Shown here one piece after another: positions 535 through 49,610 of a DNA stretch of 64,000 nucleotides (the first letter of the stretch is position 1; each line of letters opens with the position of its first letter). Position numbers and translations under genes: made by a program. Origin of the DNA: Bugula neritina (Eukaryota > Animalia > Bryozoa). Under the pieces are notes generated by a model that saw only the letters and a program-made list of their open reading frames with translations, was not told where the DNA came from and searched no databases. The stretch covers positions 2,294,001 to 2,358,000 of the forward strand of contig OZ037766.1 of assembly GCA_964035545.1 (NCBI GenBank), written 5' to 3'.

Positions 535-2675
535 TTATGGACTATTCTGCATTTTATCTAGGTCTTCTAGTGATGGTGCAGCCGTTCCTTCGGGATCATC
601 ATTTTCAATATCACTACCTCCACTACCTCCAGTATTTCCTCCTGTCCCTACACCATCTGATTGAGCCTGTGATGAAGATGGTCCTAGAATCACTCGACAG
701 TAAGCTCTGCACAGTCCACTTCCATAGGAGTTGTACATGTGATGCCTGTTGAGACCGATACTCATTTCGCTGCTGGTAGGAGTAAGAAGGTTGGGGTGTC
801 CCACCCGGTTGTATAGTGAATAGGAGCTAGACATGGAAAATCTGTGGTCCTGGACAGTCCAACGAATATAACTAAAACATAATATTGTAAATTAGGTGTA
901 ATTTCAAAATGTTGCAGCTGATTGACAACTAAAAGCACTAATTACCAATATTACCAATACTAATTACTCAATATAATAATTTTATTATTTATTACCAATT
1001 TTCAATTGTTATGTATTACAATTTGTCAATATCTACAACTAATATTATATAAGATCAAATTTTTTTGCCTGAAACTATTCACATTTTTGTTACTGAATTT
1101 TACCATGTGCAGTAATTTTATGCCATTACCAATATTTTCAGAAAGTTTTTGCTAAAAGGTTAATACTCTCACCTGTAGCTGTTGTCATCAGGATGAGAAT
1201 GGGCGTGTTTATAGCCTAGATAGTTGTAGGAATATTGAGAGGCACCATTATTTCTCAGTCTGACAGTAGCATCTTTCCCTCTTCCGTAGATGTGTGTCTT
1301 ATCAGAGGCTATGCAGAAAAATAATAAACTGTAAAAATCAGTATAGTTTAAATGAATCTGCTGATAAGTTTTACTTAATCTTTGAGTCAAATATCTATTT
1401 TGCTTGATAGAAATTTAATTATGTATGTCAAAAATATATACTATAAATAGCATAATATAACATTTCAAATAGTGTTTATACACATATGTTTGTGTCTGTT
1501 GATTTGAATATTTTTATCATTTATAATGCAAACTTTTAAACATGAAGCTGAAATATATAAACTGTGAACTAGAATAAATATTATGCTCATATAATTAATG
1601 AATGCAGTAAGTATTAAAATAAAATATTATTTTCAAACTTACAGTAGTTGCTATTTGATATGCTATAAACATATCTGTATTGTTCAGGGACATCCATGTA
1701 GAAGTAACAATATATGCCAGACGCTGTGTTAGGAAGAGAAGCAGTAACCCTGAAAATAAACACCAGTTATTGTTTAATTGCATGAGCACTGTACTCATTA
1801 ATTGCTGTATTTTATATGTCTTGGATATATATAGCAGTAATATTTAAAGTGTAAAAAAGTTGGTTCACATAAAATGGAAAATTTTGTATATATAATATAG
1901 TCCTTCAAAATATTGACTAGGAAAATGACAACAACTTTAGGATACTATTGTATTAAATATCTTACACGTAGTTCATGTTGCACAAGGAATTTGGAGTCGT
2001 GTATGGGTTGCTATCAGAGAAAGTGAAGTACGTAGAATTGTCACATCCTAAACCAGTTTGCAGGTTGCAATAGAAGTAAGTGGCATGGGCATATCCTGTA
2101 ATAAATATTCTTTGATGTCATCTATTGTGTGCATGGTGAAATTTTAGTAACGAATAATGTCGAGAAACATTTAGGTAATAAAAAAATTAGAAATCTGCTG
2201 AAATATCCAATTTTTTATTGTGTCTTTGACTTGTAATAAAAAGTTTCAGTAAAGAATTTAGTGATTACAAATTATTCTTTACAGAATTTTCCTTCAAAAA
2301 GCAATTTTCTGATAAAAATCAGATTGCTAACATTTAATTTTTTAATAAAATATTTGCATTTACTAACTGAAAATATATTTTTTTGAGTCATGGTATTTAA
2401 AAAAATAGAATAAGAAAATTAAGCGGGAATGTGAGTTTTATAATTATATATATGTCAGTATTTCAAAGTATTTCAATCTTGACATTAATAACTTTGCACA
2501 CCATTTACTTGCACTTGATTTTACTATATTTACTAATTAAAACTGTAGAAACAGAAAATTTAAATTTACTGTTCAATTATAGAGCAAAGCTCCCTTTTTA
2601 AATTTAATAAATGTAATAAAAGAAAAACTTACCAACTAGAATTGCGACCACCAGGAGGTTGAAAGTGAGAGCCAT
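535..2675 (-). CDS. G1: secreted 250-aa Tyr-rich, 6-Cys protein of unknown family with a Gly/acidic C-terminal tail (5 coding exons)
   Basis: Exons 2633-2675, 1966-2095, 1643-1749, 1173-1308 and 535-871 have GT-AG boundaries and phases 1,2,1,2, and join into a 753-nt stop-free frame: MALTFNLLVVAILVGYAHA|TYFYCNLQTGLGCDNST...IGLNRHHMYNSYGSGLCRAYC...DDPEGTAAPSLEDLDKMQNSP. All splice sites are conserved in paralogue G2. Confidence 0.9.
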
Positions 2676-2737
2676 GTTGAAGTTGAATGACAAGCCAACA
2701 GTTCAGCATGTGATGAATTCTAGAGTCTAACCTTCAC

Positions 2738-2745
2738 CTTTTATA
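2738..2745 (-). promoter_or_regulatory. TATA box of G1
   Basis: TATAAAAG on the minus strand about 30 nt upstream of a TTCATC Inr-like site and 70 nt from the ATG. Conserved in G2. Confidence 0.7.
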
Positions 2746-2977
2746 CCCTCAGTTTGGCAGACAAACACTCCAGATTTTATCAAACAGTTGAAGCGTGAGT
2801 TGAAGTCATCTAAAACAGATTTGATATATTGTTTGATCTGAATGAGATTATTCTATAGCGCAACATGCACTGGTAGATATTGCAGGTTTAATGGGCTACA
2901 TATAGACTTCTGAAATATTGCTCTATAAATCTTGCAACAGCTGAGTGTACGTGTTGCGTGTATATTCGAGTTTAATA

Positions 2978-3369
2978 ATTTCATTGCTGAACTGTGGGTC
3001 ATTTTACTTAATTTAGTAGACACTTGAAATCTCCAGTTTTTAGCTATTTTTTAAAATTTAGGTACTTTCAGAGAGTTATGGTTATTTCATAACACTCTGC
3101 AATCAAAAGTTGCTAAATAATTATGAAAAAACATGGGAAATCAAGCAAAATTAAGAACAACGTTAATTATATATAAATAATTAACGTTGTTCTTAATTTT
3201 GCTTGATTTCCCATGTTTTTTCATAATTATTTAGCAACTTTTGATTGCAGAGTGTTATGAAATAACCATAACTCTCCGAAAGCACCTAAATTTTAAAAAA
3301 TAGCTAAAAACTGGAGATTTCAAGTGTCTACTAAATTAAGTAAAATGACCCACAACTCAGCAATGAAAT
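2978..3369. repeat. 392-bp near-perfect palindrome (fold-back / MITE-like)
   Basis: Arms 2978-3173 and 3174-3369 are reverse complements with no indels and about 5 mismatched pairs. A partial third copy of the arm lies at about 3441-3500. Confidence 0.9.
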
Positions 3370-4817
3370 CTTGGGTGTGTCCATTCATATTTTACTAGTT
3401 TTGAGCAAAAACCCATGTTCATTAGCAGCTAAATTGTAAGAAATAGCTAAAAACTGGAGATTTCCAGTGTGTACTATATATAAATTAAGTAAAATGACCC
3501 TTGAAATAGCCTATTTTAATAGAAAATCAGAAGTTGATCAGTATATTGATCATACACAACTGTGTAGTATATGCCCATAGACTATTTGATTATCGTTTGC
3601 TTTGCAAATTATTTACCTGAAATGAAATATTTTAGTATATACTGCAAATATTTTCATAGCATAAATATGAGCATTGGCATTTACTAATTATATGTATTTT
3701 ATTATGTCTGCTCTTTTAAAATGTTGCATAGCTGGAATATATGTAATATACACATTTTTATCCATATTATTTAAATACAAGAGATTTGAAAAATTCTTGC
3801 GTAATGCTAAGCAACTACACTTTTGTAGTATAAAAGATAATATGCTAGATGTTTCCGGTTGCATACACTATAATACATTGGCAAATCCAACAATTCAAAA
3901 GATGTAAAGATAGCATCAGTGACATCAAAGCATATTGCAACAACTAATTATATATAGCTCCCATTTTATATAGCACCATTAAACTAGTGTAAACAGATTA
4001 TTTATATACTTAACTGCTCAATAGGTCATTAAACACCAAGTTGCTTCACAATTATAGTATTTATGGTTCATTAATATTAGCTTTGTTGTTTGGCTATCGT
4101 GTTGCACTGTACAAGGAAAGTAAAGGTAAATGTAGGCATATAATTGCATTCCTGGATAAATGGGCCGGGTTATATATAGCAGTTCTATAGGATGATGAGT
4201 TTTTCTATAATTTATCTTTTTTCCTGAATTGCATATACTGCAACGGCAAAACTATGCGGAACCTGAGTTTCTAAGGCCAAAGCAGAATGAACAAAGGAGT
4301 GTGCCTTTGTTATTAAAACAAAATGAAGAACTTTTGAATATACTAGTGTCTATAGCTTACATACAAAGTTTTAATGGGCATAGCTATATTTAGTAGCTTT
4401 TAATCTAATGAACAGTTGTAGTGGTCAGCATTAAATAATATTAAATAAAAATAAAAAATGTAAAGAAAGCATATAATATATAAGCCTAAATTAAAAGGTT
4501 GCAGGGTTATGTGCGTATTATTTACTATTGAACTAGCTGTCCATTGTTCAAACAGCACAAATTCATCAGAAAACATATTATTAGTAATGAGCAAGAAAAG
4601 CAAGTGAGCATGTGGATATTATTTCTGTTCTTGTTTAAAGATGAAAACTTGCTGGAGAATTTCTGCAGCACGTAATAATTGACTAGCAAAAAAGAGATTT
4701 GAGTTAGAATAGTATATTTGCTTGAAAATCTACTGTATTAAATTTTTGCTGCCCAATAACATTGACTAAATAAAATTAATGTTTTACTGAAGCTAGAGAG
4801 GATGGAGTTTGAAATAG

Positions 4818-5211
4818 TGTAGTGGCTGTGGGAAGTATACGCCACCACTATCCCCTACCTAAGTACTTGTATTATATTATGAGGCATAAAGTCCCCAAGA
4901 GACAACAACTCAGTTAGCAATGCTGCAATTCTGTGCAGCACTACTGCGGGAAGCCTATACTAACCAATCAGGACCAACCTTCCGACACCCAGCCTCAGTT
5001 GGAGGATAACTGTCAGCTGAATAAGCTAACTTTGTGTAACTGTTTCTGTAATTGTACTCTTTTGTTACTTTCTTTATGACTCTTTATGAACCTCAATAAA
5101 GTTCTTTCATTAAAGTTAACGAGTTTCGAGCTTTGCATAACATCATAGTGGACACGCAGTAATTACTCGTGCATACATAACACCCCACTTATAGTAGTGC
5201 ATAAAGCTACA
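4818..5211 (+). mobile_element. Probable solo LTR
   Basis: 394-bp insert absent from duplicate unit B. It has TGTAG...CTACA inverted termini, ATAG/ACAG flanks (4-bp TSD with 1 mismatch), an internal CCAAT and AATAAA at 5095-5100, and is more GC-rich than its flanks. Confidence 0.5.
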
Positions 5212-6378
5212 ACAGCTGCGACAGCGGTGAGATAATTGACCAAGATAAAGTGCAATCTTCAAGCCCAATCTAGTGCAAAACCTTCACAAATACCATCCAG
5301 ATGCAGCATTAAAAACATCTTTGTCAGCAATCATATAGCCTTTCTGCTGCTTAATAAAAAAAAACGCAAAGTGCATTAGATGGTCTAGTTTTTTAAGTGT
5401 TCCTGTATAATGAAGATTTAGTCATAGTTAAGAGTAGTCAAAATGAGTCTTGACAGAGTGTACACACGATTGGCTTTAATGCAACTTCATTACTGACCCT
5501 TTATTTACTCTTTATTTATACTCTATTAGAAGCTAGACGCAGTTACATATACCACAAAAGAAAAGCTATATAATAAAACCTATAATTACAGTTAAATCTG
5601 ATATAGCAACTTTAGTAAACCATTATATTATGTAAAATAATCTCTTGGGTAAAGCTATACTTACAGAAGAATAATTATTTTTTATTAACTGTGATAAACA
5701 CTAGTGATTCTTAGATGCATGTGTTATTGATTATTATGATTTTATTAAAGAAACAATTTGTTTATTTGAATTGTCTAATTGCTATAATATGAGTCATTGG
5801 GAACATATTAATACGAATGTGAAGAAAGCATGTAGGGAATGTTATAGGATTTAAATTGTTTGTGGCTACATATGCATTCCTATATTGCTGTCTACTTCAG
5901 CACAGCATTACAGTGTTGGCAATAAAGTTATAATTGAATATAAATTTTGTGAGAGAAAAACCCGTTTGCAATGTTATTTAAATAGTATAATTGCTATTTT
6001 TATGTGAAAATATCGATGTAAATGTAAAGAAAGCGTATGTAGAGAGTTTGCATTTGTATGCTTATAATTAACCTCAATCTTTATACGATTGGGATTGTTT
6101 ATAAGAATGCAGAATATACAAGTTACTATTTGCAGTTTGACAGAGTTTTATTAGGCAATTGGTTGTTAGGTTTGAAAACTTGTAGTTAGTTTTAGCAACT
6201 ATTTAGATTTAAAAGTAATAAAAAAGATGAATTAAAAAAGTAAAATGCTTGTTACAATTTAGCGTTTAGGTAAGATAAAAAGAGCCACAATGCATTATGA
6301 CATAAGATATGGTGTGTTTTGTTGTATTTAATATACAATCAAGCCAATTGTGAAGTTATAGTCAAGGGTACCAGTCAC

Positions 6379-8636
6379 TTATGGACTATTCTCAAGCTTA
6401 GCTAGATCTTCTAGTGATGGTGCAGATGTTCCTTCGGGATCGTCACCTTCAAGTTCAGTACCTCCACTACCTCCACTACCTCCAGTATTTCCCCCTGCCC
6501 CTTGACCATCAGGTACATCTGATTGAGACTGGGATGCAAAAGGGCTTTGTATTATTCGACAGAAAGCTCTGCACAGACCACTTCCATAAGAATTGTACAA
6601 GTGATGTCGGTTGAGACCGATACTCATTTCGGTGTTGGTAGGAGTGAAGAGGTTAGGGTGTCCCACACGGCTGGATGCAGGAGCAGTACTGTACATAGAA
6701 AATCTGTTGTCCTGCACAGTCCAACGAATCCAACTAAAAAAGGTATGTTGTAATTTCATTAAATTAATAAATACATCAACTAGACGTCGGGAGTTCTTTT
6801 AAATCTATTAAATAATAAGAATCATAATGTTTTTATTTTAGTTGTTCTCTCAAGTTGTTTTTTAACGCATATATAATAAAATCGCATTTTTATTTTAAAA
6901 TATCCTCATGTTGAACTAATGTTCCACAATCCCCTATAAATAAAAAACCTAAAATGTCAAAATAAAAGACAATAGAAATATCCTTCAGTAAGTACTATAT
7001 AATATAATATAATTAAAGTAAATAACTCATTATACTAATAGAAGTTGTATTTAAGTTTTTATCAGAGTGGAATGCTATAACTAAATTGAATACCAAGTTT
7101 TTGAGGCAGGTTAAAAATCTCACCTGTAGCTGTTGTCATCAGGGTGAGAATGGGCGTGTCTATAGCGAAGATAGTTAGAGAAATATTGAGAGGCACCATT
7201 ATTTCTCAGTCTGACAGTAGCATCTTTCCCATATCCATAGATGTGTGTCTTATCAGAGGCTACAGATATAAATAAAAACAATCAATTTAGTTTCATCCTT
7301 GTTGAAATTTTTAAAGTAACAAAATAAAATGTAAAGTTATTAAATCTAAAAGCCTTAAGCGTTGTTTATTGAGTTCTACCAAAACTGCATCTATGCATGG
7401 TACTACAAACATTAATAATTGTTGACATTACCTAGTTTAAATAAATTTTTCAAGGAAACTACTGTTTCATTAGATTCAAATGTGCATGGTTAGGTTACAA
7501 TAAATAGTATAAAGCAAAAAACCTAATTATTTTTTATACAATTGAGTGAACTAATTCGAAATTTTTACCAGATGTTTCGATAATTCATGAAATATTCAAA
7601 TTTTGAATATAATCCTGCAATATAAATTATATTGGTAACTAAAATAAAAAATTATGTCCATCTATATGTAGACGTAATTTATTAAAATAAAATATTACAA
7701 TAGATAACTTACAGTAGCCGCTATTTGATATGCTGTAAACATATCTGTACTGTTCAGGAACATCCATGTAGAAGTAACAGTAAAAGCCCGAGGCAGTGTT
7801 TGGGAGAGACACGGTAACCCTAAAAATAAACACAAGCTTTATATTGCAAAACAAAACAGCTAATGGTCTATGATCAAACACTATAGCTATTGATTATTGT
7901 ATTTTATGTTTTAGATATAGCAGTATAATATGAAAAGTATGAAGAAAAGTTCACATTTTAAACATTGCTTTAAATAAAATTTTTATTTCTAGTCATTTAA
8001 AATGTTGACTAGAAATATCACAATAACTTCAGGATGCTATTGTATTAAATATCTTACATGTAGTTCATGTTGCACAAGGAGTTTGGAGTCGTGTATGGGT
8101 TGCTACCTAAGAAAGTGAAGTGCGTAGAATTGTCACATCCTGCACCAGTTTGCAGATTGCAGTTGAAGAAAGTTATAGCATGGGCATATCCTGTAATAAA
8201 TATTCCTTGATTTCAACTTTTGTAAGATAAAAACATCAAAAAATTTTAGTAATACATGCATGCATGCTTGGTAAATTTTCATAAAAAACAAAAATGGATA
8301 AAGTGTGAGATTTAGTATTTTATATAATTATTATAGTTGTCTATTATTGTAAAATTTTATGATTATTTTAAAAATATTTCGGGTTTTTATAATTTTTATT
8401 TTGTCTCATCAAAACAAATTAAGTTTTTGACAAGCATTCTTGACTAAAATAATTTTTTTTTAAATTATTCAACATTTTAAAGTCATAAATTAGCTATATT
8501 CAATTTTTTGTATTTTCTTTTTGGAGATGAAAAATTTTTTTTTAGATTTAAACTTGTAAGTTAAAGTCAATAAATGTGATTGAAAAAACTTACCAACTAG
8601 AATTGCGACCACCAGGAGGTTGAGGGTGAGAGCCAT
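6379..8636 (-). CDS. G2: secreted 257-aa paralogue of G1 (5 coding exons)
   Basis: Exons 8594-8636, 8058-8190, 7713-7819, 7124-7259 and 6379-6733 have GT-AG boundaries and the same phases as G1, giving a 774-nt open frame MALTLNLLVVAILVGYAHA|ITFFNCNLQTGAGCDNST...SLEDLAKLENSP. All six Cys are conserved. Confidence 0.9.
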
Positions 8637-8698
8637 GTTGAAGTTGAATGACAAGTCAACAGTTCAGCATGTGATGAATTCTAGAGTCTAACCTTCGC

Positions 8699-8706
8699 CT
8701 TTTATA
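8699..8706 (-). promoter_or_regulatory. TATA box of G2
   Basis: TATAAAAG at the same position relative to the ATG as in G1. Confidence 0.7.
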
Positions 8707-11158
8707 CTCTCAGTTTTGTGAAGAAACACTCCAGATTTTATCAAACAGTTGAGGCGTGAGTTGAAGTCATCTAAAACAGATTTGATATATTGTTTGATCT
8801 GAATGAAATCATGAAGGCTTATTATTTATTGGCAAATGTTACAGGTTTTACATGTTCAAAATTTTTGTCCCCACTGCTATTCAAACTGGGCTTGCAGGTA
8901 AATAAGTGCACTAACCATTACGCAACAAGGCACATGGCCATAGGTACTCTCATATGCACAGAAATCCCTGCTGTTTCATGTTACAAAATGTAGTTACATG
9001 CATTTTACTGATTGTAATAGTTCAATAATTATATTTCTAGTTTATAATATTTATACTATATACATGATAAACTACATAATTTAGTTACAATAGATTATTT
9101 AATTGAAGTAAATAATAAATTTAGCGTATTAACAGCTTAAATGTATAATTAATTGCAATATATCAATTGATAATTTTGTTATTTTTACTCTTTAAAAAGC
9201 TGCAGAGCTGACATGTAGAAATCTTTTTCTTTTAACTTCCAATACGCAGGTACATGCAAGTACATGTATAGTTAAAACATTATTACATCCTAAATTTTTT
9301 TGCAATTGAAATTTGAATAGGTAGAAATCTGAAATGTTTTTACTACTAGAGAAAATTTAATTATGAAACTTATCAAAATCTGTTTTTATCATTTTAAAAC
9401 AAAAAAAAAAATATAAATTATAATTGCCTCGAAAAATGATAAAGTCATTAGTGGAAAAAGACTTTTTCTCAAAATAAATTTTAATATAATTCTAGGCAAC
9501 ATGAACTTTATCAGTTGCAATAATTAAACAGCTTTTGTTTTTTGATAAAAATGAGTAGTATTGACAAAAACATCTAAGAAATTTTAGCTTGCTCCATATG
9601 TTATCTTCTTAAAGTCAGAATTTGGTATGAAAAGTTTGCAAAAAATATTATAAATGACTGGAAGTGATTGATAAATCTACAAAAACTTTTCAAAGTTACT
9701 TCAAGATTCAAATTTACAAATTTAAAGCAACTTTAATTGCTGCCTGCAAAGCTTTTTAGGCATGCAACCCTCAAACAGCCAGTAGATTACAGCAATCAGA
9801 AATATACAAATATTTTAACTATATATTATGAAAAGCAGGATAGACAATAACAATTAAATGTTTATTTGTTTAAACAAGTACGTCAATAACATAGCTCATG
9901 TAGCCTTTGTGCAGTTTGCAGCTATATAAAGATGATGAAGCTTTAGAATATAAAATTAAGTGCCAAAAATAAAACAGCTTCTGGCATGTAATCCATAATA
10001 CAACAAATGGCTATTTCATTATAGTTGGGTAGATACCAAAACAAAGTGCAAAAGTTAATCATCTGTAATGCTGTATATTTTATGATCAGTATAAAGATAA
10101 TATATTGCCATGCAAACATTAATATAGTTAAGTGACAATTAATGACCAAAGGTCTATATCTAAATTATTAAATAATGAATACTGCAAGTTTGCACTCATA
10201 TAATGGGAGATGAGACAAGTTTCAATGTTCATTTCATGAAGTCGTTTGAGTGTGTCATCATATGGCACTCTAATGGTATCTAGTTATTAGTCTAAAGTTG
10301 ACATCTTTTGAAAACAAATTCAGAAGCACTGTTGCCTTTTCTGTTTGTACGGAAAAATACAAAACAACTATTGATACTGCTTAATATAAAATAAGAAAAA
10401 GCCAGGCATAAGTAGTCTAGTTTCTATTAAATTATTAACTATTTACTTCACACAACGTGTTCATGAGTTTTACTTCTTATTAGAGGAACTTCCAAAAATT
10501 AATCAAATAATTGCAGCACAAAACGTGCAGCAAATATAAATAAAGCTCATAAAATAAGTTAGTTCAATTATTTTTGCAAGTTCAAATATCTGTTTAGTAA
10601 TTATTGGTAATACAAATACATTTTTTATGTGTTATTTGAATTGAGTAGCAATTCAGCCATTGATTATAACTGCGTGCTGTAAGTGATTTGCATTTCTATC
10701 TTCAAAGTCCCCAAAGACTTTACCAGCTATAATATGATTGAAGAACATGTTTTTTCGATTAAACCGTTAATAACTGGCCCTTGCACTATTCTCTGTTAAT
10801 AAAATAAGTTTCAGATTAGGCGTTGGAGTATATATGCAGGAATAACCCAGCTGGTTTCATTATCCATATAATATATTAGCAATTCAAATATTTCAAAAGA
10901 TGCAAAGACATAGTATATAATATGTAATGGTATGAAGAACAATAAAGCATATTGCATTAACTTAAATATTTATGCTTCATTGATTTCACCGCAGGCATCA
11001 TTAAACTAATGTAAACAAATTATTTAACAGCTCAATAGGTCATTAAACACTAAGTTGCTTCATAATTATAGTATTTATGGTTCATTAATATTAGCTTTGT
11101 TGTTTGGCTATCGTGTTGCACTGTACAAGGAAAGTAAAGGTAAACATTGGCACGCTAA

Positions 11159-16504: not shown

Positions 16505-16876
16505 GTAAGTGTTTGTAATATGGTACGATAATTTAAATAATACTTTTTTTGCATAAATATTGAAAAAAAATTGATACCTAAAATAATCATATAGATATAA
16601 AGCATTGATACATAGTATACTAATTTTATCAGCACATATTAACAAATTTATTTTCAAAATGCTGCTAAGGTTTTGAAATATCACAAAATATTTTAAAAAA
16701 TAAAATTGGTAAATCTTGGCTTTAAAAAAGGTTTTGGTAAATTAAACTTTAAAATAATTTTATCGCATAAATTTAGAAGTCTGAAAATTTCTATTTTCTA
16801 GATGCATCACTTATTTTTGTTCAATGAAAATAAAATTTATTTAATGAATGCTATTTTTAGCAGACTGTTTATCACC

Positions 16877-29162: not shown

Positions 29163-29476
29163 CTTAAAAAGTTCCAATAAGTTCTGAAAAACAAACAACT
29201 TTTAAGGCGAAGTTCTATACCAAGTAGAGATTATAAGAATATGTTGCAGTGGTAATCAGTGATTTATACTAAAAGAGAAAGATACAACTTTTGAAAAAAA
29301 ATTGTATACTCCTGTGAGCAACATGGAAAATATTAGAAAAAAATATTAATTATGGTGAAAATAAATTTTTGATCTGCTTTATACACAGACTATATAAAAC
29401 TGCCTATTTTAGTTCTATAAACTGTAATGCTATATTCATAAGTCAAATTAACAAAAACCATATGTTTGCTGCTTAC

Positions 29477-38200: not shown

Positions 38201-40874
38201 TTGCCCCCTCTCCTGCTCTCCACCTCTTTAATCCTTATAAGTGTGAGCAAACTCCTTTGTCTAATCATATTCTTAGCTTTTTCCTCAACTGATTATAACT
38301 CATTGTTTAATTATTTATGGCCAAGTACTTGCATGGCTTATATTTATTAGCTAAAAGGCTGATCGACATTTAAGTGGCTATAAAAACTGTAGCCAGACAC
38401 AAAAACCAAGACAATTTCAAAAATAATTTCGGTTGCCTTTCAGAAGTAATTGAATTTTTTCCTGCCATTGATTTAGATTTCGACTTTGTGGTGAGGAATT
38501 TTTCAGGAATGTGCAGTGAGACTTCAGACTTAATAGTCTAGCCCACAATCCTACTTCAACAAAGCTTCATTTATTTAATGAGGTTTATTATATACTCACA
38601 TTGTACCATAACCGCAATACGTGTAAAACTCTCTTTAAAATGTCATCAACACTCATTATGTGTGTTAGGTGGTGCAAGTCAAATACCACCACCCCACATA
38701 CCAATCAGATTCATGGTGGAGTTTGCAGTTGCTTGTTATTCATAGAAAAGCTTTTAGAAATTGAACATAAAATGCAAATTTTTAGGCGGTAACAGTATAG
38801 CAAGCCTCTTTCTAAAAAACAATTAAAGACTATAATATGTTAAAGCTCAATGTGCAAAAATTGGTGTACTTCTATAAGTACATATTATGAATGCTTCAGA
38901 TCAATTTCATGGACTTTTATTTAGTTACTTTAGATATATATTAAAACTAATCCACTCATTGCTCATAATAACATTATTTTAATAATCTCGGTGTAATCAA
39001 GTTTTTTGAACTCTTATAGAGTTATCCTCTCTGAATAACTAAAGCAAACTAAGTAGCACATGCAGCTGTTCAATTGCCTTAAAATGCTTATTTAAAGATT
39101 TTTTATGACATTTCTTCAAAACTAAGAAAAAGCTCAATTTATATAATACAAAATTATCAAAAGGCTACAAAGGTGAGTACATATATTATGGTCTAATGCA
39201 AAGTGATTTTAATTTGAAACTCCCAAATGTCAAATTCACAATTTTTGGAAACCTTTAGTTAAACAGTTAAACTAGATGAAATTTACCTTCGAAAAATTAT
39301 ATTAAACTTGAAAAATTATGTTTGTCAACACCTAAACTGAAAAAGTTTAGTAAAATTCAAAAAACTTATTGAGTTGTGATTCGCTTTTAATACCAAACTA
39401 TAGATGCTGGTAAATTTGACTTTCTCGCTTTTAATTCCATAGTGTTTTTTATCTTAGTTACATAATTTTAAAATAATATATAATATAATAGCTAGTCTAG
39501 CATATATGCGTACAACTTTTTGAGCACATTACTAATACAATACGTGACGTGATTTGTGAGTGGTATAAAGCAATTTATTTTTAAGGGTAAACCTTTTGAG
39601 TTATCTAAACCACTACTACACAACTCAATTTCCTCTAATTGCATGAAAAATTATTTTTATTGGTTAACTTAATATGGGGTTTAACTTTAAAACCCCATGA
39701 ATATTCCAAAAACATTTTGTTTCAACAAAGAATAATGCGTTCCACTATTCATAAAATAATACGCATAATATTATATAAATTGAAAGTGAATATAGCTTAA
39801 TAGTGATATAAACAGTAAACATATTTTTATACAGTGCTATGGCATTTTATGTGTGGTAGCATATTTGCTTCTGTTGCTATAAGTTATAACTTAAAGTTGT
39901 AATTGCAGAATATAAAATATATAAATTGTAAGGATCGAAGGTTTAATCATTTCCATGATGTCATCCTTTTGCTTAAAGCATTTATATTAATTAGTATCAT
40001 TTGCTTCATTGTTCAGCTTTAGTGGCAAAGGCTCCATGTTAACTTTGAAAATTTGATGACACATCACTTTTTCAAATCTTCTTATTTTAAATGCAAATCT
40101 CTTATACAATCAAATAGAAAACACACTATATATAGTATAGTTGTTGAAATGCTTATTTATACATATACAAGTACCTACAACTTTAAAGAGTATATCATTA
40201 TTATTATAATAGGTGGCTGTACAAGTTTGCTTTATAATTTTATACTAAACAAATTATTTGACGTGTACTGTAATAATACTTAAATGATTATATAAGTATT
40301 TTCCTGGAAGCCAGGATTTTATGCTAATATAATATAGTTTAACCAAGTAATAGAAGTGAAAACAGTATATATTGCACGAAAGTAGCCTTTCTAAACTGAA
40401 CGGACATACATGTATAGTATATTCACAATTCATAGTATTTTCTTCTCAGGCTGATTACTTCACTGAGGAGAAGTTATATGATGTTCTAAGAGTGCTTTAC
40501 GCTAATCATATTTGTGCAAATTGCTACAAAAACTACGGCCAACAAAAAGGATCATTGGTTATTATAGCTTCAGGACTAGTATCGAAAACGTGTGATACGT
40601 AGTTCAAGTAGAAGTCATTGAGGATGTCAGGAAGAGCATCCAATCCTAATTGCTTTTGGGTCACAACATCTTTTAGCCAGTTTAAAACCCCTTATCGTTG
40701 TGATTAAAGAGTGGTGGTATAAGGCTATGTTAAGGTATTGAAATAATTTTACCTGGAATAGTAATTGTTGTTTACTGGGTGACGGTTTCTAACGCTCCTA
40801 ACAATGCCATGGCTGTAGGTTTGAGATACGAAACATACTTCTATCAGAGCTAGTAGCAGCCATAGAACCTTCAT
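35294..40874 (-). CDS. G6: small secreted Tyr/Arg-rich prepropeptide (~67 aa; 3' exons tentative)
   Basis: Exon 40753-40874 encodes MKVLWLLLALIEVCFVSQTYS|HGIVRSVRNRHPVNNNYYS and ends in phase 2 (AG|gtaaaa). Micro-exons 38600-38632 (gtgagt donor) and 36480-36517 (ttttacag / gtaagt) continue in frame as REFYTYCGYGTMYRKRYGQRRWGS. Terminal exon 35294-35304 (AFY*) is uncertain. A 5'UTR exon donor CAG|GTGAGT lies at 41871. Not present in the supplied ORF track. Confidence 0.55.
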
Positions 40875-42698
40875 TCTATCTCAAGTTTACCTTTAAAATA
40901 ATAAGGAAACTCAAGCACATTAAACATATAATATTCACATTTCTACTCAAGTAGAGAGGTTAGCTAGTTTTTGACATGCGTGCTCCTGTAAACCCTTTTT
41001 GAAGTTAGGTTGATTTGGAAATTTTCTCTCTATAGCAACAATTGACTCGCCTATTTCATGCGTCATGCCCTTTGAAAAACTAACGTATCATTAAAATCGA
41101 TTACATAATTTACATAATTTAAAACTTTTACTTGCATCAATAAAGCTTTATTAAACACACCTTGAATAAGTAATTTAATTTAGAAAGTAATTACATAATA
41201 AAATTTGAACAGCTATAAACTGGATGCATTTTTGAAACGTGCCAAAAAAGGTTATAGCACAAATAGTGTTGGTTAGTTGTATTTACAATGGGAAAAGCCT
41301 CAAAAAATATTTCATGTATCTATATAAATGAATGTTTTATCTAAAATGTTGAATTTAGGGTATAAAAGTATTTTAAACATTTTGAGTGCCTTATATAATT
41401 ACACATGTCATAAATACATAATGCATATATATAATTGCAGATGTACAGTAGAAGATCATTCCTCTTATATTTGCAACAAATATTGCATTATCATGATACA
41501 GTTATATTCTGCATTCATAAAATATTAAGACGCTATAGTAACTTTCAGCTAGGGTGCATATTAAAAGATTAAGAGTTTCAAAAAAGCTTTAATGCTACAT
41601 TGTGAATGTTATAATATGCATATAAGTGTATAGCTATACATCAATAATAACTTGTATTAAACAACCTAGCTCAACGTAAATTATGTTTATTAACTTGAAA
41701 ATACTAAAAGGTTGTGAAATAATTGCTAGAATTTAAAGCTTTCATTAATTAAGCTTTTATAGCTCGCAAATTTAGATCAAAAGTTTCAGTTCAGTAATAA
41801 TGAAAATCACAAAATTATTAGTGGAAAATAATTGCCTAAGTAAATCAAATTTGTCAACAGTAAAACTCACCTGGACAGATGGTGTGGGAAAAGAAGATGT
41901 TATATTATATCAAGCTTTGAGTGCTTTTGTCGAATGTATCTATAAACATCTATTATAACCAGAAGAAGAACTGGAGAGAAAACCAATTGACTAGAATGTG
42001 GTGTTTACCAGGAGCAACTCAGCCTTATAAATTCCTTACATGAGCTCTCAGTATACCTGGGTGACCTTTTCCTTGCCTTGAATCTGTATGAAGTGGCTTA
42101 TTTACCAACTGACAAACTCACATTGGCTACACAATAGTGCCAATTACTCATCCCAATTTACATAAATTTGCATACTTTGGTAATCAGTCGTCGTATTCAA
42201 AGGTAACTCAAAGGCGACACGCCATAAACATTTTCCTACCTATGTGCTAAACTCAATCAACAACATAGAAGTCTTGCTTTACGTCACAAGTTGTATAGGA
42301 AAGTCACATTGAAGGGTGGAATTGTTGGGTGGACAGATCTCTGCAATGCTACGGAGCCAACCAAAAGGGCGATGACTAGAAAGAGTTGATAGAATTCTGA
42401 CTAAAGTAATTAATATTCAAAGAATTTACTGCAATATATTAAACCACATATGGGGAAGTAATATGTTACAAGTGCGCATCATCTATGGATAATATTACTG
42501 AATAGTAACTCAAACTCATTATACCAGTGGCTACAGTATAATACATAACATTGTTGAGGCAATGTAAGTGTAGACTAGGAAACGGCAGGCATATTTATAT
42601 TATAATTCATCATCAAACTAGTTGAAGTTGTTTGTTCTGAAGTTTTCATAAACAAAATACAATCAGATATTATATTATATTATATATACATGTATATA

Positions 42699-44456
42699 CA
42701 GTGATGTGAAAAAGTTTAAGGACGCTTGCAGAAATTTCTATGTATCTTGTTTAATAGGCATTTCTTGTAAGTTCCTAATATTTTCCTGCAAGTTCTATAT
42801 ATCAAAATGACCCTTAGAATATGCTCTACAATTTCCACCTTCTAAATTCCTGCTGTTGTGATGTTTTCTACTCATTTTTGGGCCAACTGCACAAGCAGCT
42901 AGGGAAGCGCAACTCCTATATTTTTATGTAACCAAAGTTCATCGACTTTTATAACCACAAAAGGCTAAATAGTGAAATTTGACTTTGTGCATAGCATCAT
43001 GATATCATAAAGTATGGCTTCCTTTTATAATTTGAAATATGTCATTTAGTTGTGAGCTTTTACATGGTGTCCACTTGGGCGCTGCGCATAGACTAAATGA
43101 GAGGTGTAGATCTTCCTTCAGAGGCAAAGTTTGTAATAATTTTCTTGCACAAAGAAGGTTATTCAATTAGGAAAATATCTGAAAAGGTTGGCAAAGTAAA
43201 GACAACTGTACATCAAATTATCAAGAAGTTTATGGACACTGGTAGTGTAGCAGATGGACCTGAAAATGGCCGACCAAAAATAAGCACACCTAGAGATGAC
43301 AAGGTTCTCATTGGGATCAGCAAGTAAGATTGCCATAAAAAAAGTCTTGCGTAGGCAAGGAATAGACAGAATCAACAGGAACACCAGCTTCGACATCCCT
43401 GATAAGGCAAGATTGCTGAGCCATGGTTTACATGGCCGCAAAGCAAGAGGAAGCCTCAACCAACCGAGAAGCAACAAAAAAGTCGGTTACGGTGGGCCAG
43501 GGAGCCTGGTAATTAGACAGTGAATGATTAGAAAAAAAGTATTTTTTTCAGATGAATCCATATTTAATGTGAACAATCATGCTGGAAACTGTTGTGTTAA
43601 AAGGTACCAGTATGAGAAATATAACTCTTAATGTATTCTTCGAACAATTAAGCACCCTATCGGTGTTATGTTCTGGGGTTGTATAACATCAAAAAGCGTA
43701 ATTGCTCTGGAATGATGTTAATGCTCAAAAATATATGGAGAATCTCAATGCTAAGCATCTTCCAATCATAAAAAACTTCTTTTTAAATGAAATTAACATA
43801 TTTGAAGATGACAATGCACCATGCCATTGGGCAAAAACTGTTAAAAAGTGGATGAAAAAGCAGAGGGTCTCAACGCTTAACTGGCCAGCACAAAGCCGGG
43901 ACTTGAACCCAATAAGAAATTTATGGTCAAGAATGGCTAAAATAGTCTCTTCACAGAAGCCAACAACTAAGGTGACACTCATAGAGCCTGTAATTCATGC
44001 ATGGCGTCATGTCGTGACTGAAAACGAGTTGGAGAAGCTGTACGAGTCGATGCCTCGTCGCTGCCGACTGGTGATTGAGAATAAAGGCTGGCCAACAAAA
44101 CATTGATACTAAAATTCAAAGCACTGTGTGTTGCAATGCTGCTATAATGTGTATAACAATTTACATATAATATTTTTCTATGTTTCAAGTAAAATATTCT
44201 GATGTCTTACAATACACACAAATTGTGAGAACATTAAATAATTCCCATATATGCATAGTATCTCATTGTTTTACCCAAATCTTTTGGAGGATGTAAAAAG
44301 AGAAACTTATAATCTATATGAATGAGATAAGGAGATCTTAAGGATCATTTTGATAGGCACCATGCCTATGGAAATGCATTAGTTATGTCTTAAAATTAGC
44401 TTTGAACATTGCTATTATGGAAAACAGGGAGGCGTCCTTAAACTTTTTCACAGCAC

Positions 44457-44458
<2 letters not shown>
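42699..44458 (+). mobile_element. Tc1-family DNA transposon, full length (1760 bp), inactive
   Basis: 27-bp TIRs CAGTG(A/C)TGTGAAAAAGTTTAAGGACGC with 1 mismatch, a TA TSD, and internal transposase remnants. Confidence 0.95.
43097..44106 (+). pseudogene. Tc1 (DD34E-type) transposase pseudogene
   Basis: HTH region GYSIRKISEKVG..TVHQII, GRPK linker, FSDES, FEDDNAPCH and WPAQSRDLNPIRNLW. Broken by stops and frameshifts. The position 34 residues after the second Asp reads R instead of E. Confidence 0.92.

Positions 44459-44508
<50 letters not shown>

Positions 44509-44529: not shown

Positions 44530-44597
<68 letters not shown>
44459..44597. repeat. (TA)n tract abutting the right TIR of the Tc1 element
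   Basis: Read directly; interrupted by a short (TTA)n. Confidence 0.95.
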
Positions 44598-44601
<4 letters not shown>

Positions 44602-47355: not shown

Positions 47356-48213
47356 TCATTTGCAATTGCAGCGTAGCTGCATGCCTCACTGCTAACAAAT
47401 AAGAAATGTTATTAGGCTCAACACTATTGTTATAGCCTAAAACCAAAACTCAAATCATGAGTTCTTTTGCAAACTTTTTCAAATTTTTTAGTAAAGGCTA
47501 AAAAAGATGTTTCTATAATATATGCATGGTATCGAATAGCGTACATATAACAGTCAGTAGATACTTTAATGATAAAGAAATAAGCATTCTGAGATTTCAT
47601 TGAACTTGTTTTATATTAAAATGAAGTTTTTAAGCTTTTCTCTTATACTCTTAAACCATCGATAGAGGCTATAGTGAGCCTAAGTGTTGATTTATTTAAT
47701 AACTGTGCTTTTGATTGCTATTCAACTAGTTGCATGTGTAATTGGGGGAAATTGTTTTATACACATTTTGTCTTTTCTTTGTGATATTCTGAAAAGCTGC
47801 ACCTTAAATTATAATAATCAAATATGCAACAAAAAACATCTTTCCATAAAATGCTCATATTAATTGTTATTTTTTTTGATTAGCTCAATTTGACAAGACA
47901 TAAGTTAAAGTGAGTTATATAAACAGTTGGACATAGTTTTTGGGATATTTTATTTAACCATCAACATGAAAATGATATTGTAAACTATTGTTTTACATGA
48001 AACAATAAGTGAATGACAACAAAATGCAATAACTGGTAGTAAAGCTGTTTCTACTCCGACTATAATGTTGAACTCATTTGTTTGTATATAGCTAAACTTA
48101 GTCTGCAACAACAATTACATGTTTAGGTTAGAATTATTAATTATGCATGTTTTCAATCAATCCAGATCTGTGTCATTTTCATTGATCGGTTAATACAATC
48201 AAGGATGTAGTTT

Positions 48214-48700
48214 TTATGGGTTCAAAGATTGAGGATTTTCATTACCATGAACAATAGGGTGTTCTGTAGAAGGTTTCTTTGGCGGTGGTCTGCAACAACA
48301 AAGTAATAATACCATTATATAAGTACTTGAATAACAATTGATAAATGTTTCAATAAAAAAGACAAATTTGTGTGCCTAAATTCATTATTTAAATTTTAGC
48401 CTACAAATAACAATTGAAAACTTTCGCTATTATAAATACTCGATCATTCTTGGAATTCAAATAAATCCTACAGTGAGCTTTCTAATAAAAAAGCTATAAG
48501 AGTATTATTTCATGTTCTATATTACAATTATATAGCATTATTGAAGCAGTTAAAAATGCATTGAGTAAACTGGTATTATATAACTGGATAATATCCAGCT
48601 GGAATATGAATACATACCTTTCCTCTCCTTGCAGCGGAGCTTGCATACCAAGAGACAGTACAGCTAGACATAAGACCAGTAAAAAGGCAAAGATCTTCAT
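48214..48700 (-). CDS. G7: 52-aa secreted Pro-rich peptide precursor
   Basis: Exons 48618-48700 (AG|gtatgt, phase 2) and 48214-48289 (ttgcag|A) give MKIFAFLLVLCLAVLSLG|MQAPLQGEERPPPKKPSTEHPIVHGNENPQSLNP*. Acceptor ttttcag before 48725 upstream of the ATG. Confidence 0.75.
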
Positions 48701-49519
48701 TTTAGCTTCAACGGTTTTTCGGAGTCTGAAAATATAAAATATTATTCTATAAAATAGTTTATGTTGTGCCTGAGCTTATCTGTTTATAGTATAAAGCATT
48801 TAGTATATGCATTTCAGGTAACCAGTGGTATGTTGCAATTGGTTTCAAAATACAAAAATTTTAGACCAAAAGATTTTGGAGTATTTTTGTATTAAATATT
48901 ACAGAAATATCATAATCACAAGAATAATATTTAAATGCATTTATATTCCATTAACAATAGAAATAATATTATTCATAATATTTTGCAAATCATAACAACG
49001 AAATTAAAAAACAACATTGGCGTAAGTAAATTAGTAGTCATATTTATAGATATATAGATTGATATACAAATAATTGCTGATTTTATATATAGGTACCAGA
49101 AATTAAAATGCTGCATCATAACTAGTTTTAATAAATTTGTTGGTAAACAGTTACTCGCACCTGTACAATATCTAAACTCAGTTATTTCAATAAGCATTTA
49201 TAAAATAGAATACATTTTAACAATTTTTTGTGTACAATTTCTTTTTATTAATATACCCAATTTTGTATAAGTAAATGAGTTAAATAATAGCATAACATTT
49301 CCACTAAATGAGAAAAATTTTCAAATGCTTATGATTCTAACATATAACAATATATTATAAGATTTTTAGATTTATCATATTATTAACGTGATTTTAGAAA
49401 TTCTATAATCTTGCTGCCATCATTACGCATGTACTATTTAGAAAACATTTGCAGAAGCTAAATATAAACTCAATATTACACGCTAAGCTGAAACAAACTA
49501 AATAAAATAATTTTCTAAC

Positions 49520-49610
49520 CTTAGCTTGTGAAGTTTGTAGGATATACTTTGTATATCTGCAGCTGCTGTAGTGGATATAGTGAGTTTCATGCCACCATAG
49601 CACTTATATA
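49520..49610 (-). promoter_or_regulatory. G7 TATA box and non-coding exon 1
   Basis: TATATAAG at 49603-49610 (minus), TCACT Inr-like site about 30 nt downstream, donor AAG|GTTAGA at 49520. Confidence 0.55.

What the first reader, a model, noticed from the sequence alone, without database searches (positions are those of the whole stretch)
535..49610. Candidate undescribed secreted adhesive/cement/matrix gene cluster: seven consecutive unassignable signal-peptide genes
Seen: every host gene I could model over about 49 kb (G1-G7) starts with a signal peptide, six have a clear TATA box, and none resembles an enzyme or housekeeping gene. Their chemistries are complementary: Tyr/Lys-rich (G4), Arg/His-rich (G3, G6), poly-Ser with SxE motifs (G3, G4, G5), a Pro/Thr rod (G4), and disulfide-bonded domains with acidic tails (G1, G2). 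Established: marine glues such as mussel foot proteins and sandcastle-worm Pc proteins, and biomineral matrices, combine DOPA/cationic proteins with phosphoserine-rich ones. Inference: this is a co-expressed kit for one secretory gland or life stage, such as larval attachment cement, tube/cuticle or skeleton.
Basis: partly seen in the sequence, partly recalled or inferred. Interest (0 to 1): 0.9.

Follow-up and report, generated by a model that had tools for sequence, protein, structure and literature searches.

The report
Bryozoan cluster of orphan secreted-protein genes
A 49-kb stretch of the bryozoan Bugula neritina genome really does hold seven neighbouring genes for secreted proteins of no known family, largely products of local gene duplication. 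They are plausible parts of a cuticle, skeleton matrix or glue, but nothing here shows that they work together.

Summary
The window is chromosome-scale contig C2 of a 216-Mb assembly that matches the published Bugula neritina genome. Between 535 and 49610 I could model seven signal-peptide genes and one decayed Tc1/mariner element. I found no enzyme or housekeeping gene.

- **G1/G2:** five-exon tandem duplicates. They align full-length with 'uncharacterized' Watersipora subatra proteins, so they belong to a family whose only named members are bryozoan. A low-confidence fold suggests a ConA/galectin-like beta-sandwich.
- **G3/G5:** these share a ~75-aa C-terminal module. G3 also shares a motif with a further gene ('G0') just outside the window. 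The three form one orphan family of charged, disordered proteins.
- **G4:** a Tyr/Lys-rich head, 28 PPPTTT[FL] repeats and a Ser/Glu-rich tail.
- **G6/G7:** small peptide genes. The G6 model is incomplete.

dN/dS of about 0.3 for G1/G2 and for G3 against a congener shows real coding constraint. G3 to G7 and G0 share a design: an acceptor-like site 17-33 nt before the ATG, and a first coding exon ending in phase 2.

No RNA data could be reached, so co-expression and any adhesive, cuticle or skeleton role remain untested. Duplication alone explains much of the clustering. The scan had already noted parts of this window (s1-472633, s1-472634) and secreted-peptide clusters on neighbouring DNA of the same contig.

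The parts
535..2675 (-). G1: 5-exon gene, 250 aa. It has a signal peptide, a ~190-aa 6-Cys domain and an acidic Gly/Ser tail. A TATAAAA lies 70 nt before the ATG.
   Evidence: Paralogue alignment and GT-AG sites. Full-length collinear alignment with Watersipora proteins P0008, P0012 and P0020. dN/dS against G2 is 0.31.
6379..8636 (-). G2: tandem duplicate of G1, 257 aa, with the same five exons. The promoter block is 92.8% identical to G1's.
478..13544 (.). Tandem segmental duplication: 478-5946 corresponds to 6320-13544. It carries G1 and G2 plus conserved non-coding blocks.
   Evidence: Self-BLAST.
16877..18269 (+). G3: 2-exon gene, 286 aa, pI 11.8. In order: signal peptide, His/Gln/Gly/Tyr block, phase-2 intron, WYGKTSRGRPVIGVT motif, Arg-rich block, poly-Ser/Asp runs, and a C-terminal triple-repeat module.
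   Evidence: An orthologue sits in a congener's genomic contig: 85% identity by BLASTP for the called protein P0001, 90% over 200 aligned exon-2 codons, dN/dS 0.32, and the ORF stays open.
17970..18200 (+). The ~75-aa module shared by G3 and G5 (WRQIF..GG.KLAL.PG / RNIF...R....LF / NIG.GRLMLG). Coordinates are approximate.
   Evidence: 60% identity over 82 aa, E=5e-20. Alignment A4. The AF2 model is poor (pLDDT 47) but places a beta-hairpin on each unit.
23520..24974 (+). G4: 2-exon gene, 395 aa, pI 10.1. It has a signal peptide, an 84-aa Tyr/Lys/Pro/Thr-rich head that includes AKPSYK, and 28 repeats of a 7-aa PPPTTT[FL] unit. A phase-2 intron is followed by a 55-aa Ser/Glu-rich tail. An AATAAA signal lies near 25172.
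   Evidence: No homologue of the head was found.
26269..29162 (-). G5: 6-exon gene, 413 aa, pI 10.8, with all five introns in phase 2. It has a signal peptide, Pro/Gln/Ser exons, a Gln/Gly/Tyr/Ser-rich exon and the C-terminal module shared with G3. A TATAAA lies 106 nt before the ATG.
   Evidence: A second haplotype in DNA run X1 shows 5 synonymous and 5 non-synonymous exon SNPs. It also has an in-frame 3-nt insertion in exon 1, while the only two 1-nt indels inside the gene lie in an intron.
40753..40874 (-). G6 first coding exon: a signal peptide followed by HGIVRSVRNRHPVNNNYYS. It ends in phase 2 at AG|GTAAAA. If left unspliced it reads as a 41-aa ORF.
   Evidence: It is single-copy in the genome. 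The donor design matches the Arg/Gly/aromatic peptide genes in L012.
36480..36517 (-). Candidate G6 microexon (38 nt) encoding (R)YRKRYGQRRWGS. It has a strong acceptor and a GTAAGT donor and ends in phase 1. The 3' exon was not found.
   Evidence: The link to the G6 first exon is inferred from phase and from the design of the L012 genes.
48214..49610 (-). G7: a 52-aa prepropeptide with coding exons 48700-48618 and 48289-48214. A probable non-coding first exon follows the TATATAAG at 49603-49610 and has a donor near 49520.
   Evidence: It is single-copy. There is no homologue and no transcript evidence.
42667..44494 (+). Decayed Tc1/mariner transposon: inverted ends plus HTH and DDE_3 fragments. 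It is not part of the gene set.

Best explanation
**What is shown.** This is part of a lineage-restricted 'secretome island' on a Bugula neritina chromosome. It was built mainly by tandem duplication followed by fast divergence.
- **G1 family.** There are three local copies (G1, G2 and one 6 kb before the window) and one copy 2 Mb away. Each encodes a ~250-aa secreted protein with a 6-Cys domain and a variable acidic or low-complexity tail. The only named relatives are Watersipora proteins.
- **G0/G3/G5 family.** This is an orphan family of highly charged proteins that are largely low-complexity and probably disordered. G0 lies just outside the window.
- **Others.** G4 is a mucin-like protein. 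G6 and G7 are small peptide genes.
- **Shared design.** G0 and G3-G7 all have a probable 5'UTR intron ending 17-33 nt before the ATG and a signal-peptide exon ending in phase 2. The cluster therefore resembles the vertebrate SCPP cluster in organisation: one old secreted gene, duplicated, with diverged mature regions.

**What is inferred.**
- The larger proteins (G0, G3, G4, G5) are components of an extracellular material such as the cuticle or skeletal organic matrix, a mucous coat or an adhesive.
- They are made in the ER. The Pro/Thr rod is O-glycosylated. The Ser runs and SxE sites are phosphorylated in the Golgi.
- Polycationic Arg/His/Lys/Tyr segments then associate with polyanionic phospho-Ser/Asp/Glu segments by charge-driven condensation.
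- The G1-type beta-sandwich may bind glycan (chitin or mucin-type sugars).
- Whether all these genes act in one tissue is unknown.
For: - **Species and place.** G000 has 216,009,554 bases. The Bugula neritina assembly is reported as 216.00 Mb (PMC11480708).
- **Duplication.** Self-BLAST. The G1 family has 4 genomic matches. G3 matches G5. G0 matches G3 at E=8.8e-7.
- **Family reach.** An exhaustive profile search found 14 hits. The only full-length and the only named hits were Watersipora 'uncharacterized' proteins.
- **Model check.** G1 and G2 align collinearly with those proteins and keep 6 conserved Cys.
- **Fold.** The AF2 model of homologue P0012 is all-beta, with pLDDT 54 and pTM 0.51. 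Three independent structure searches all put ConA-like lectins, galectins, GH16, LamG and PL7 on top: Foldseek E about 1e-4, TM up to 0.56, VIA Z 8-9.7.
- **Constraint.** dN/dS is 0.31 for G1/G2 and 0.32 for G3 against its congener. G5 has 5 synonymous and 5 non-synonymous SNPs, and its only exon indel is in frame.
- **No known family.** Pfam found nothing, nor did PDB sequence search. Homologue searches returned only a congener for G3 and nothing for the G4 head.
- **Shared exon design.**
- **Composition.**
Against: - No expression data of any kind were reachable. The tissue, the life stage and even transcription itself are unproven for every gene here.
- The fold assignment rests on a low-confidence model of a homologue, not of G1 itself. 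Z values of 8-10 are only just above the tool's stated background.
- The material function is argued from composition alone. Arg-rich, dibasic-rich G3 and the small cationic peptides would fit host defence equally well.
- The shared phase-2 design has modest statistical weight, with roughly four independent lineages.
- G6 is incomplete, and G7 rests only on sequence signals.
Confidence: 0.55

Rival explanations
1. All seven genes are one co-regulated kit made by a single gland or life stage, such as the larval internal sac, and together form an attachment cement or matrix.
For: - The charge chemistries are complementary and real.
- The run of secreted genes is longer than the window. It includes G0, which has His-rich, PT-rich and acidic SxE-repeat blocks.
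- The papers reached by my two searches on bryozoan skeletal-matrix or adhesive proteins describe none, so an undescribed kit is possible.
Against: - No shared promoter motif beyond chance.
- Duplication explains the adjacency.
- G1/G2 look lectin-like.
- G6 follows the design of neighbouring Arg/Gly/aromatic peptide genes.
- G4 has no mfp-1 repeat structure and no homology to it.
- Co-expression was not testable.
Confidence: 0.15
2. A host-defence or effector island. G1/G2 would be secreted lectin-type recognition proteins. G3, G6, G7 and the neighbouring Arg/Gly/aromatic and Cys-rich peptides would be antimicrobial or signalling peptide precursors. Fast divergence would be driven by microbes on a heavily colonised, symbiont-bearing animal.
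For: - Lectin-like fold matches.
- G3 has 13 dibasic sites and pI 11.8.
- G6 and G7 would give mature peptides of about 20-35 aa.
- Neighbouring clusters hold cationic RFGG/GYNRGF peptides and Cys-rich peptides (scan notes s1-472160 and s1-472024).
- Orphan status and tandem expansion are typical of immune effectors (general knowledge).
Against: - G4 (mucin-like rod), G5 (413 aa, Gln/Gly/Tyr/Ser-rich) and G0 (acidic SxE repeats) do not look like antimicrobial peptides.
- dN/dS of about 0.3 shows no positive selection at whole-gene level.
- The dibasic sites in the shared G3/G5 module are not conserved.
Confidence: 0.2
3. G6 and/or G7 are not genes. They would be chance signal-like ORFs in AT-rich DNA, so the run is five genes from three families (the G1 family, the G3/G5 family, and G4).
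For: - A hydropathy scan gives 25 signal-like ORFs in 50 kb, most of them junk.
- G6 and G7 have no paralogues.
- No homologue or recorded product was found for G6.
- The G6 3' end was not found.
Against: - G7 has a TATA box and a strong donor and acceptor. It also has an open second exon ending in a stop, a downstream AATAAA, and an upstream TATATAAG with a donor that fits a non-coding exon.
- The G6 donor (AG|GTAAAA, phase 2) and its microexon (ending ..GS(G)|GTAAGT, phase 1) copy the design of two clear peptide genes in L012.
Confidence: 0.25

Closest known systems
Vertebrate SCPP (secretory calcium-binding phosphoprotein) gene cluster: enamel, dentin, bone, milk and saliva proteins
   Same: Both are tandem clusters made by duplication. 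Both appear to have a non-coding first exon and then a signal-peptide exon. Intron phase is uniform, so exons can duplicate. The mature regions are disordered, low-complexity and fast-diverging, with Ser-x-Glu or poly-Ser phosphorylation-type motifs.
   Different: There is no sequence homology. Introns here are phase 2, not phase 0. The phylum differs. Phosphorylation, calcium binding and tissue are all untested here. The cluster also holds a folded-domain family (G1/G2).
Mussel foot protein 1 (mfp-1) and other DOPA-type adhesive proteins
   Same: The G4 head is basic and rich in Tyr, Lys and Pro, and it contains AKPSYK, which recalls the AKPSYPPTYK decapeptide. The protein is secreted.
   Different: It is a single 84-aa region, not about 75 tandem decapeptides. 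The repeats in G4 are PPPTTT[FL], which are mucin-like. No homologue was found. DOPA and Hyp are unknown.
Sandcastle-worm cement proteins (Pc-1/2 cationic, Pc-3 polyphosphoserine)
   Same: Both pair polycationic sequences with Ser-run or acidic sequences that could form complex coacervates. G3 carries both kinds of sequence in one chain.
   Different: G3 is 18% Ser, not the >60% of Pc-3. Its net charge is strongly basic. There is no homology.
Concanavalin A-like lectin/glucanase superfamily (legume lectins, galectins, LamG, GH16, PL7)
   Same: The predicted all-beta sandwich of the G1-family homologue matches these folds best in three separate searches. The protein is secreted.
   Different: There is no sequence-level match to any Pfam or PDB family. 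The model confidence is low. The 6-Cys pattern and the acidic tail are specific to the bryozoan family.
Watersipora subatra uncharacterized proteins XP_067940046.1 and XP_067938663.1
   Same: They have the same length as G1/G2 (246-248 aa). They have a signal peptide and a CNLQ.G.GC start. They share the 6 Cys, the IGLN[RK] and GLC..(Y)C motifs, and a low-complexity tail.
   Different: In the exon-level alignment to P0012, identity runs from 22% (exon 4) to 43% (exon 2). The tails are Pro-rich rather than acidic. The HSHPDDN insertion in Bugula is absent.

Membership tests
Bryozoan G1-type secreted protein family (unnamed; Watersipora XP_067940046 and XP_067938663) | Full-length collinear similarity including the six Cys and the IGLN[RK]...GLC..(Y)C C-terminal motif | tested here: met
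   A profile of exon 5 hit P0008 and P0012 at E of 1e-5 to 1e-4 and exon-sized fragments down to 3e-31. MAFFT of the G1 and G2 models with P0008, P0012 and P0020 is collinear, with 6 invariant Cys.
Concanavalin A-like lectin/glucanase superfamily | Two-sheet jelly-roll beta-sandwich fold | tested here: inconclusive
   The AF2 model of P0012 has pLDDT 54 and pTM 0.51. The top matches are all of this fold, but TM is 0.3-0.56 and Z is 8-9.7, close to the tool's background.
Concanavalin A-like lectin/glucanase superfamily | Sequence match to a member family (Pfam or PDB) | tested here: not met
   No Pfam hit at E<=1. No PDB sequence hit at E<=10.
Mussel foot protein 1 | Tandem AKPSYPPTYK-type decapeptide repeats across most of the protein | tested here: not met
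   TRF finds only the 21-nt PPPTTT[FL] array. The Tyr/Lys head is 84 aa and non-repetitive.
Mussel foot protein 1 | Detectable sequence relatives | tested here: not met
   A search restricted to residues 20-112 of G4 gave no hit. It covered only proteins of about 190-600 aa, so mfp-1 may lie outside that range. The metagenome scan found nothing.
Mussel foot protein 1 | Tyr converted to DOPA and Pro to Hyp | not testable with these tools
   This needs mass spectrometry or amino-acid analysis.
Secreted mucins (PTS-domain proteins) | Long tandem Pro/Thr/Ser-rich repeat domain behind a signal peptide | tested here: met
   28.3 copies of a 21-nt unit with 89% matches. Mature G4 is 29% Thr and 29% Pro.
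Gel-forming mucins | VWD, C8 and Cys-knot domains | tested here: not met
   No Pfam domain and no Cys in mature G4.
Sandcastle-worm Pc-3-type polyphosphoserine proteins | Ser as the dominant residue, giving a very acidic phosphoprotein | tested here: not met
   G3 is 17.7% Ser with pI 11.8. G5 is 12.5% Ser with pI 10.8.
SCPP-like cluster organisation (analogy, not homology) | Tandem duplicates sharing exon design and uniform intron phase | tested here: met
   All nine introns placed in G3, G4, G5, G7 and G0 are phase 2, and the first coding exon of G6 also ends in phase 2. G0, G3 and G5 are linked by sequence.
SCPP family proper | Phase-0 introns and vertebrate SPARCL1 descent | tested here: not met
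   Introns here are phase 2, and no homologues were found outside bryozoan-derived sequences.

The most novel reading that the evidence does not exclude
The island is the bryozoan counterpart of the vertebrate SCPP cluster. One ancestral secreted gene (non-coding exon 1, then a signal exon ending in phase 2) was duplicated. It diversified into cationic, His-rich, phospho-Ser/acidic, mucin-like and peptide products. Together with a bryozoan-specific lectin-like family, these build the cheilostome cuticle/skeletal organic matrix and/or the larval adhesive. That would give the first molecular toolkit for bryozoan biomineralisation or attachment.
Probability: 0.15. Interest if true: 0.7.

Novelty: new member of a known kind. 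Interest (0 to 1): 0.4.

Why it matters
Bugula neritina is a major fouling organism. Bryozoans evolved calcified skeletons independently of molluscs and brachiopods. My two literature searches turned up no described bryozoan skeletal-matrix or adhesive protein.

This work gives curated exon models, two new protein families (the G1 type and G0/G3/G5) and a shared gene design. Together they form a concrete candidate list for in situ hybridisation, proteomics and antifouling work. If the genes turn out to be defence-related instead, the island would be a compact example of secretome diversification by tandem duplication.

As it stands, this is an ordinary kind of lineage-specific secreted-gene cluster of unknown function.

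Tried and rejected
- **RNA evidence.** The single run search returned only runs X1-X3. Laying them on 24450-29330 showed contigs crossing introns and intergenic DNA. X1 is therefore genomic DNA, and X2 and X3 hold almost none of the stretch. I obtained no junction or expression data.
- **Known families.** Pfam on every exon and on the Watersipora homologues found nothing. PDB sequence search with the family profile found nothing.
- **ESM Atlas.** Look-alike searches for the last exon of G5 and for P0012 gave no usable hit.
- **Homologue searches.** G3 exon 2 returned only a congener's genomic ORF. The G4 head returned nothing. P0012 returned only itself and one close Watersipora paralogue.
- **Metagenome scans.** Scans with the G4 head and with the G3/G5 module found nothing.
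- **Exact look-up.** The unspliced 41-aa G6 ORF is not on record.
- **Shared promoter motifs.** One GC-containing 7-mer was shared, against a control mean of 0.2 and a maximum of 3. This is not convincing.
- **Missed genes.** I checked GC peaks and ORFs between the models (4.8-5.3, 11-12, 19.7, 38 and 42 kb). None looked coding.
- **G6 3' exon.** Acceptor and ORF scans over 11 kb found only the microexon.
- **Fold of the G3/G5 module.** pLDDT was 47, so it is unusable beyond a hint of three beta-hairpins.
- **Neuropeptide reading of the module.** I rejected it because the GGRK site in G3 is GGNK in G5.
- **Published peptide lists.** The Bugula in-silico neuropeptide paper holds no match to short motifs of G6, G7 or the neighbouring genes.
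- **Joined models.** I never sent spliced proteins to a search or fold tool. Exons were searched by reference. The full-length fold was done on the Watersipora homologue. Joined models were used only inside scripts, for translation, composition, dN/dS and a local alignment.

Full report
**Where we are.** The window is G000:C2:2294001-2358000, on a 33.6-Mb contig of a 216,009,554-base assembly with about 30% GC. The G1/G2 proteins match 'uncharacterized protein [Watersipora subatra]' entries. The assembly size equals the 216.00 Mb reported for the Bugula neritina genome (PMC11480708). I therefore take the host to be the cheilostome bryozoan Bugula neritina. Earlier scan notes say the assembly also carries ciliate mitochondrial contigs. 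This window lies on a chromosome-scale contig and is animal-like: GT-AG introns, TATA boxes and a Tc1/mariner relic.

**Checking the observation.** A hydropathy scan for Met-initiated signal-like ORFs gave 25 candidates in 50 kb. Most are AT-rich junk. Six of these ATGs begin a gene model; the G4 start came from the looser scan.

- **G1 and G2.**
  - They lie in a tandem duplication, 478-5946 against 6320-13544.
  - Aligning the two copies exposes five conserved blocks bounded by AG/GT, plus a promoter block that is 92.8% identical and holds GGTATAAAAGG 70 nt before the ATG.
  - The spliced models are 250 and 257 aa. Each has a signal peptide ending AHA, six Cys and an acidic Gly/Ser/Asp/Glu tail.
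- **G3.** It has one phase-2 intron, 17125-17656.
- **G4.** The 341-aa 'ORF' ends in CAT|GTAAGT, which is a donor. A second exon at 24809 adds a 55-aa Ser/Glu-rich tail.
- **G5.** It has six exons, and every intron is in phase 2.
- **G7.** It is a two-exon, 52-aa precursor.
- **G6.** It is incomplete. I found a signal exon ending AG|GTAAAA (phase 2) and a well-flanked 38-nt microexon 4.2 kb downstream that encodes RYRKRYGQRRWGS. I found no 3' exon.

Between the models I found only a decayed Tc1/mariner at 42667-44494 and non-coding GC peaks. Pfam recognises none of the exons. Three qualifications apply. Only four TATAAA boxes sit within about 110 nt before the ATG (G7's other candidate, TATATAAG, lies about 900 nt before the ATG, ahead of a putative non-coding exon). 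Ser runs are prominent only in G3. G1/G2 do have relatives.

As a rough guide from general knowledge, about one animal gene in five or six has a signal peptide. Five independent lineages in a row would then be expected with a probability of order 1e-3 to 1e-4, so the run is not chance. The run also continues outside the window (see below).

**Are they real coding genes?**
- G1 against G2 gives dN 0.10, dS 0.34 and dN/dS 0.31, or 0.26 in the Cys domain.
- The only database hit for G3 is a 194-aa ORF on a 2.6-kb Logan contig (SRR4020080). That contig is collinear with the window, intron included, at 87% nucleotide identity. It is therefore genomic DNA of a close relative.
- Across 200 codons of G3 the proteins are 90% identical, dN/dS is 0.32, and the congener's reading frame stays open throughout.
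- DNA run X1 carries a second haplotype over G5. It has 5 synonymous and 5 non-synonymous exon SNPs and an in-frame ATT insertion in exon 1. The only two 1-nt indels inside the gene lie in an intron.
- The G1 and G2 models align end to end with annotated Watersipora proteins.
- G6 and G7 have no such support.

**What the families are.**

*(a) The G1 family.*
- There are four copies in the genome: G1, G2, one copy 6 kb before the window (L003), and one at C2:4.32 Mb (L004) with a Gly/Asn-rich linker.
- An exhaustive profile search of 1.84 billion representatives with the exon-5 alignment found 14 proteins. Only two are full-length, and both are from Watersipora subatra. The rest are exon-sized ORFs from unannotated contigs.
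- Because a spliced protein has no reference, I folded the Watersipora homologue P0012, using the family alignment with the window exons as rows. The model is all-beta but weak, with pLDDT 54 and pTM 0.51.
- Foldseek against PDB, the ESM-Atlas shape search and an independent VIA-align sweep all rank concanavalin-A-like sandwiches first: legume lectins, galectins, LamG/TSP-N, GH16, GH32-C and PL7. This agreement is suggestive but not proof.

*(b) The G0/G3/G5 family.*
- G3 and G5 share a ~75-aa C-terminal module of three related units (60% identity, E=5e-20). This confirms scan note s1-472633.
- While checking the flanks I found a further gene 9-10 kb before the window, at L018:3646-5193, which I call G0. 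In order, it has a signal peptide, a His-rich block, a PT-rich block, a phase-2 intron and the motif WVGRTSRGRPVIGVT.
- Almost the same motif opens G3 exon 2 (71% over 28 aa, E=8.8e-7). After it, G0 has DSHSFE-type acidic repeats and a Pro/Gln-rich region.
- No member of this family exists elsewhere in the genome, and none beyond the congener was found in the databases.

*(c) G4.* It is an orphan. The AKPSYK noted in s1-472634 is present. It sits in a non-repetitive 84-aa head, and the repeats are mucin-like, not mfp-1-like.

*(d) G6.* It copies the exon design of two clear Arg/Gly/aromatic peptide genes 6-16 kb beyond the window. In those genes a signal exon ends AG|GTA in phase 2, and the next exon ends ..G|GTAAGT in phase 1. 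This fits scan note s1-472160.

**A shared gene design.**
- In G0 and G3-G7, and in the two L012 genes, an acceptor-like T-rich site followed by AG lies 17-34 nt before the ATG.
- In all of them the first coding exon ends in phase 2.
- For G7 an upstream TATA box and donor make a non-coding first exon likely.
- The G1 family differs, with intron phases 1, 2, 1, 2.
- With about four independent lineages the phase coincidence is only modestly significant (roughly 0.02-0.04 by my estimate).
- Taken with the sequence links G0-G3-G5, it suggests descent from one ancestral secreted gene. That organisation recalls the vertebrate SCPP cluster, apart from the phase.

**Mechanism.**
- *Shown:* the genes are secreted-type, lineage-restricted, duplicated and under purifying selection. 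No known enzymatic or housekeeping domain was recognised.
- *Inferred from composition and established biochemistry:* Thr/Pro rods are O-glycosylated. Golgi kinases phosphorylate S-x-E and Ser runs. Polycations and polyanions condense. On this basis the larger proteins are most likely components of an extracellular material, and G1/G2 may act as glycan-binding partners.
- I put this at about 40-45%. The stricter 'single co-expressed cement kit' I put at about 15%, and a defence or effector island at about 20%. G3 has 13 dibasic sites and pI 11.8, and the peptides are cationic.
- I found no shared promoter motif.

**What could not be done.**
- No RNA run was found. The runs offered were DNA or other organisms.
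- The spliced proteins were not sent to any search or fold tool. Exons were searched by reference, and the joined step was left out.

**Verdict.** Tandem duplication is a sufficient reason for much of the clustering. This is a new member of a familiar kind, a lineage-specific cluster of secreted low-complexity protein genes. Its practical value is as a candidate list for bryozoan cuticle, skeleton, adhesive or defence studies.

Noticed in passing
L018:3646-5193 (+), which is G000:C2:2283646-2285193, 9-10 kb before the window: Gene 'G0' has a signal peptide, a His-rich block (HHHHHPHHRRHSHH...) and a PT-rich block. A phase-2 intron is followed by WVGRTSRGRPVIGVT, the motif shared with G3. After that come DSHSFE acidic repeats, a Pro/Gln-rich region and an acidic C-terminus. 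It extends the cluster and links G0, G3 and G5 into one family.
   Followed up: partly
L012:761-1120 (+) and L012:8346-7960 (-), which is C2:2364-2374 kb, beyond the window: Two genes for secreted Arg/Gly/Phe/Tyr peptides (RFGG and GYNRGF motifs) have the same exon design as G6: a phase-2 signal exon and then an exon ending in phase 1.
   Followed up: partly
window 16850-16876, 23490-23519, 29163-29190, 40875-40895, 48701-48730: Every non-G1-family gene has a T-rich acceptor-like site 17-33 nt before its ATG. This is most simply a 5'UTR intron, and for G7 an upstream TATA box and donor fit that reading. Trans-splicing was not excluded.
   Followed up: partly
window 2978-3369: A 392-bp near-perfect palindrome (97% self-complementary) lies just upstream of the G1 promoter. 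It may be a foldback or MITE-type element.
   Followed up: no
window 3973-4130 = 10995-11144 (92%); 5444-5946 = 13032-13544 (85%): Non-coding blocks within the duplicated unit are conserved as well as the exons are. They have no open frame and may be regulatory or repeat-derived.
   Followed up: partly
window 42667-44494: A decayed Tc1/mariner transposon with roughly 60-bp inverted ends, an HTH fragment and a DDE_3 fragment, in broken frames.
   Followed up: partly
window 58432-60114 (-): An intronless 560-aa ORF with a Gln-rich C-terminus and no signal peptide or Pfam match. It is the first non-secreted candidate gene after the run.
   Followed up: no
window 55178-55681 and 56776-57286: Two ~500-bp dinucleotide microsatellites, (TG)n and (AC)n, lie in inverted orientation 1.1 kb apart. 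A 196-bp unit is duplicated in tandem at 54305-54697.
   Followed up: no
window 29018 and 26371-27083: DNA run X1 carries a second haplotype of G5. It has an in-frame ATT insertion in exon 1 and ten exon SNPs, 5 synonymous and 5 non-synonymous.
   Followed up: yes
L004 (G000:C2:4317496-4320768): A dispersed fourth G1-family copy has a long Gly/Asn-rich (NGN/IGN) linker in place of the Gly/Ser linker. It keeps the C-terminal DP..APxxExLDKL motif.
   Followed up: partly
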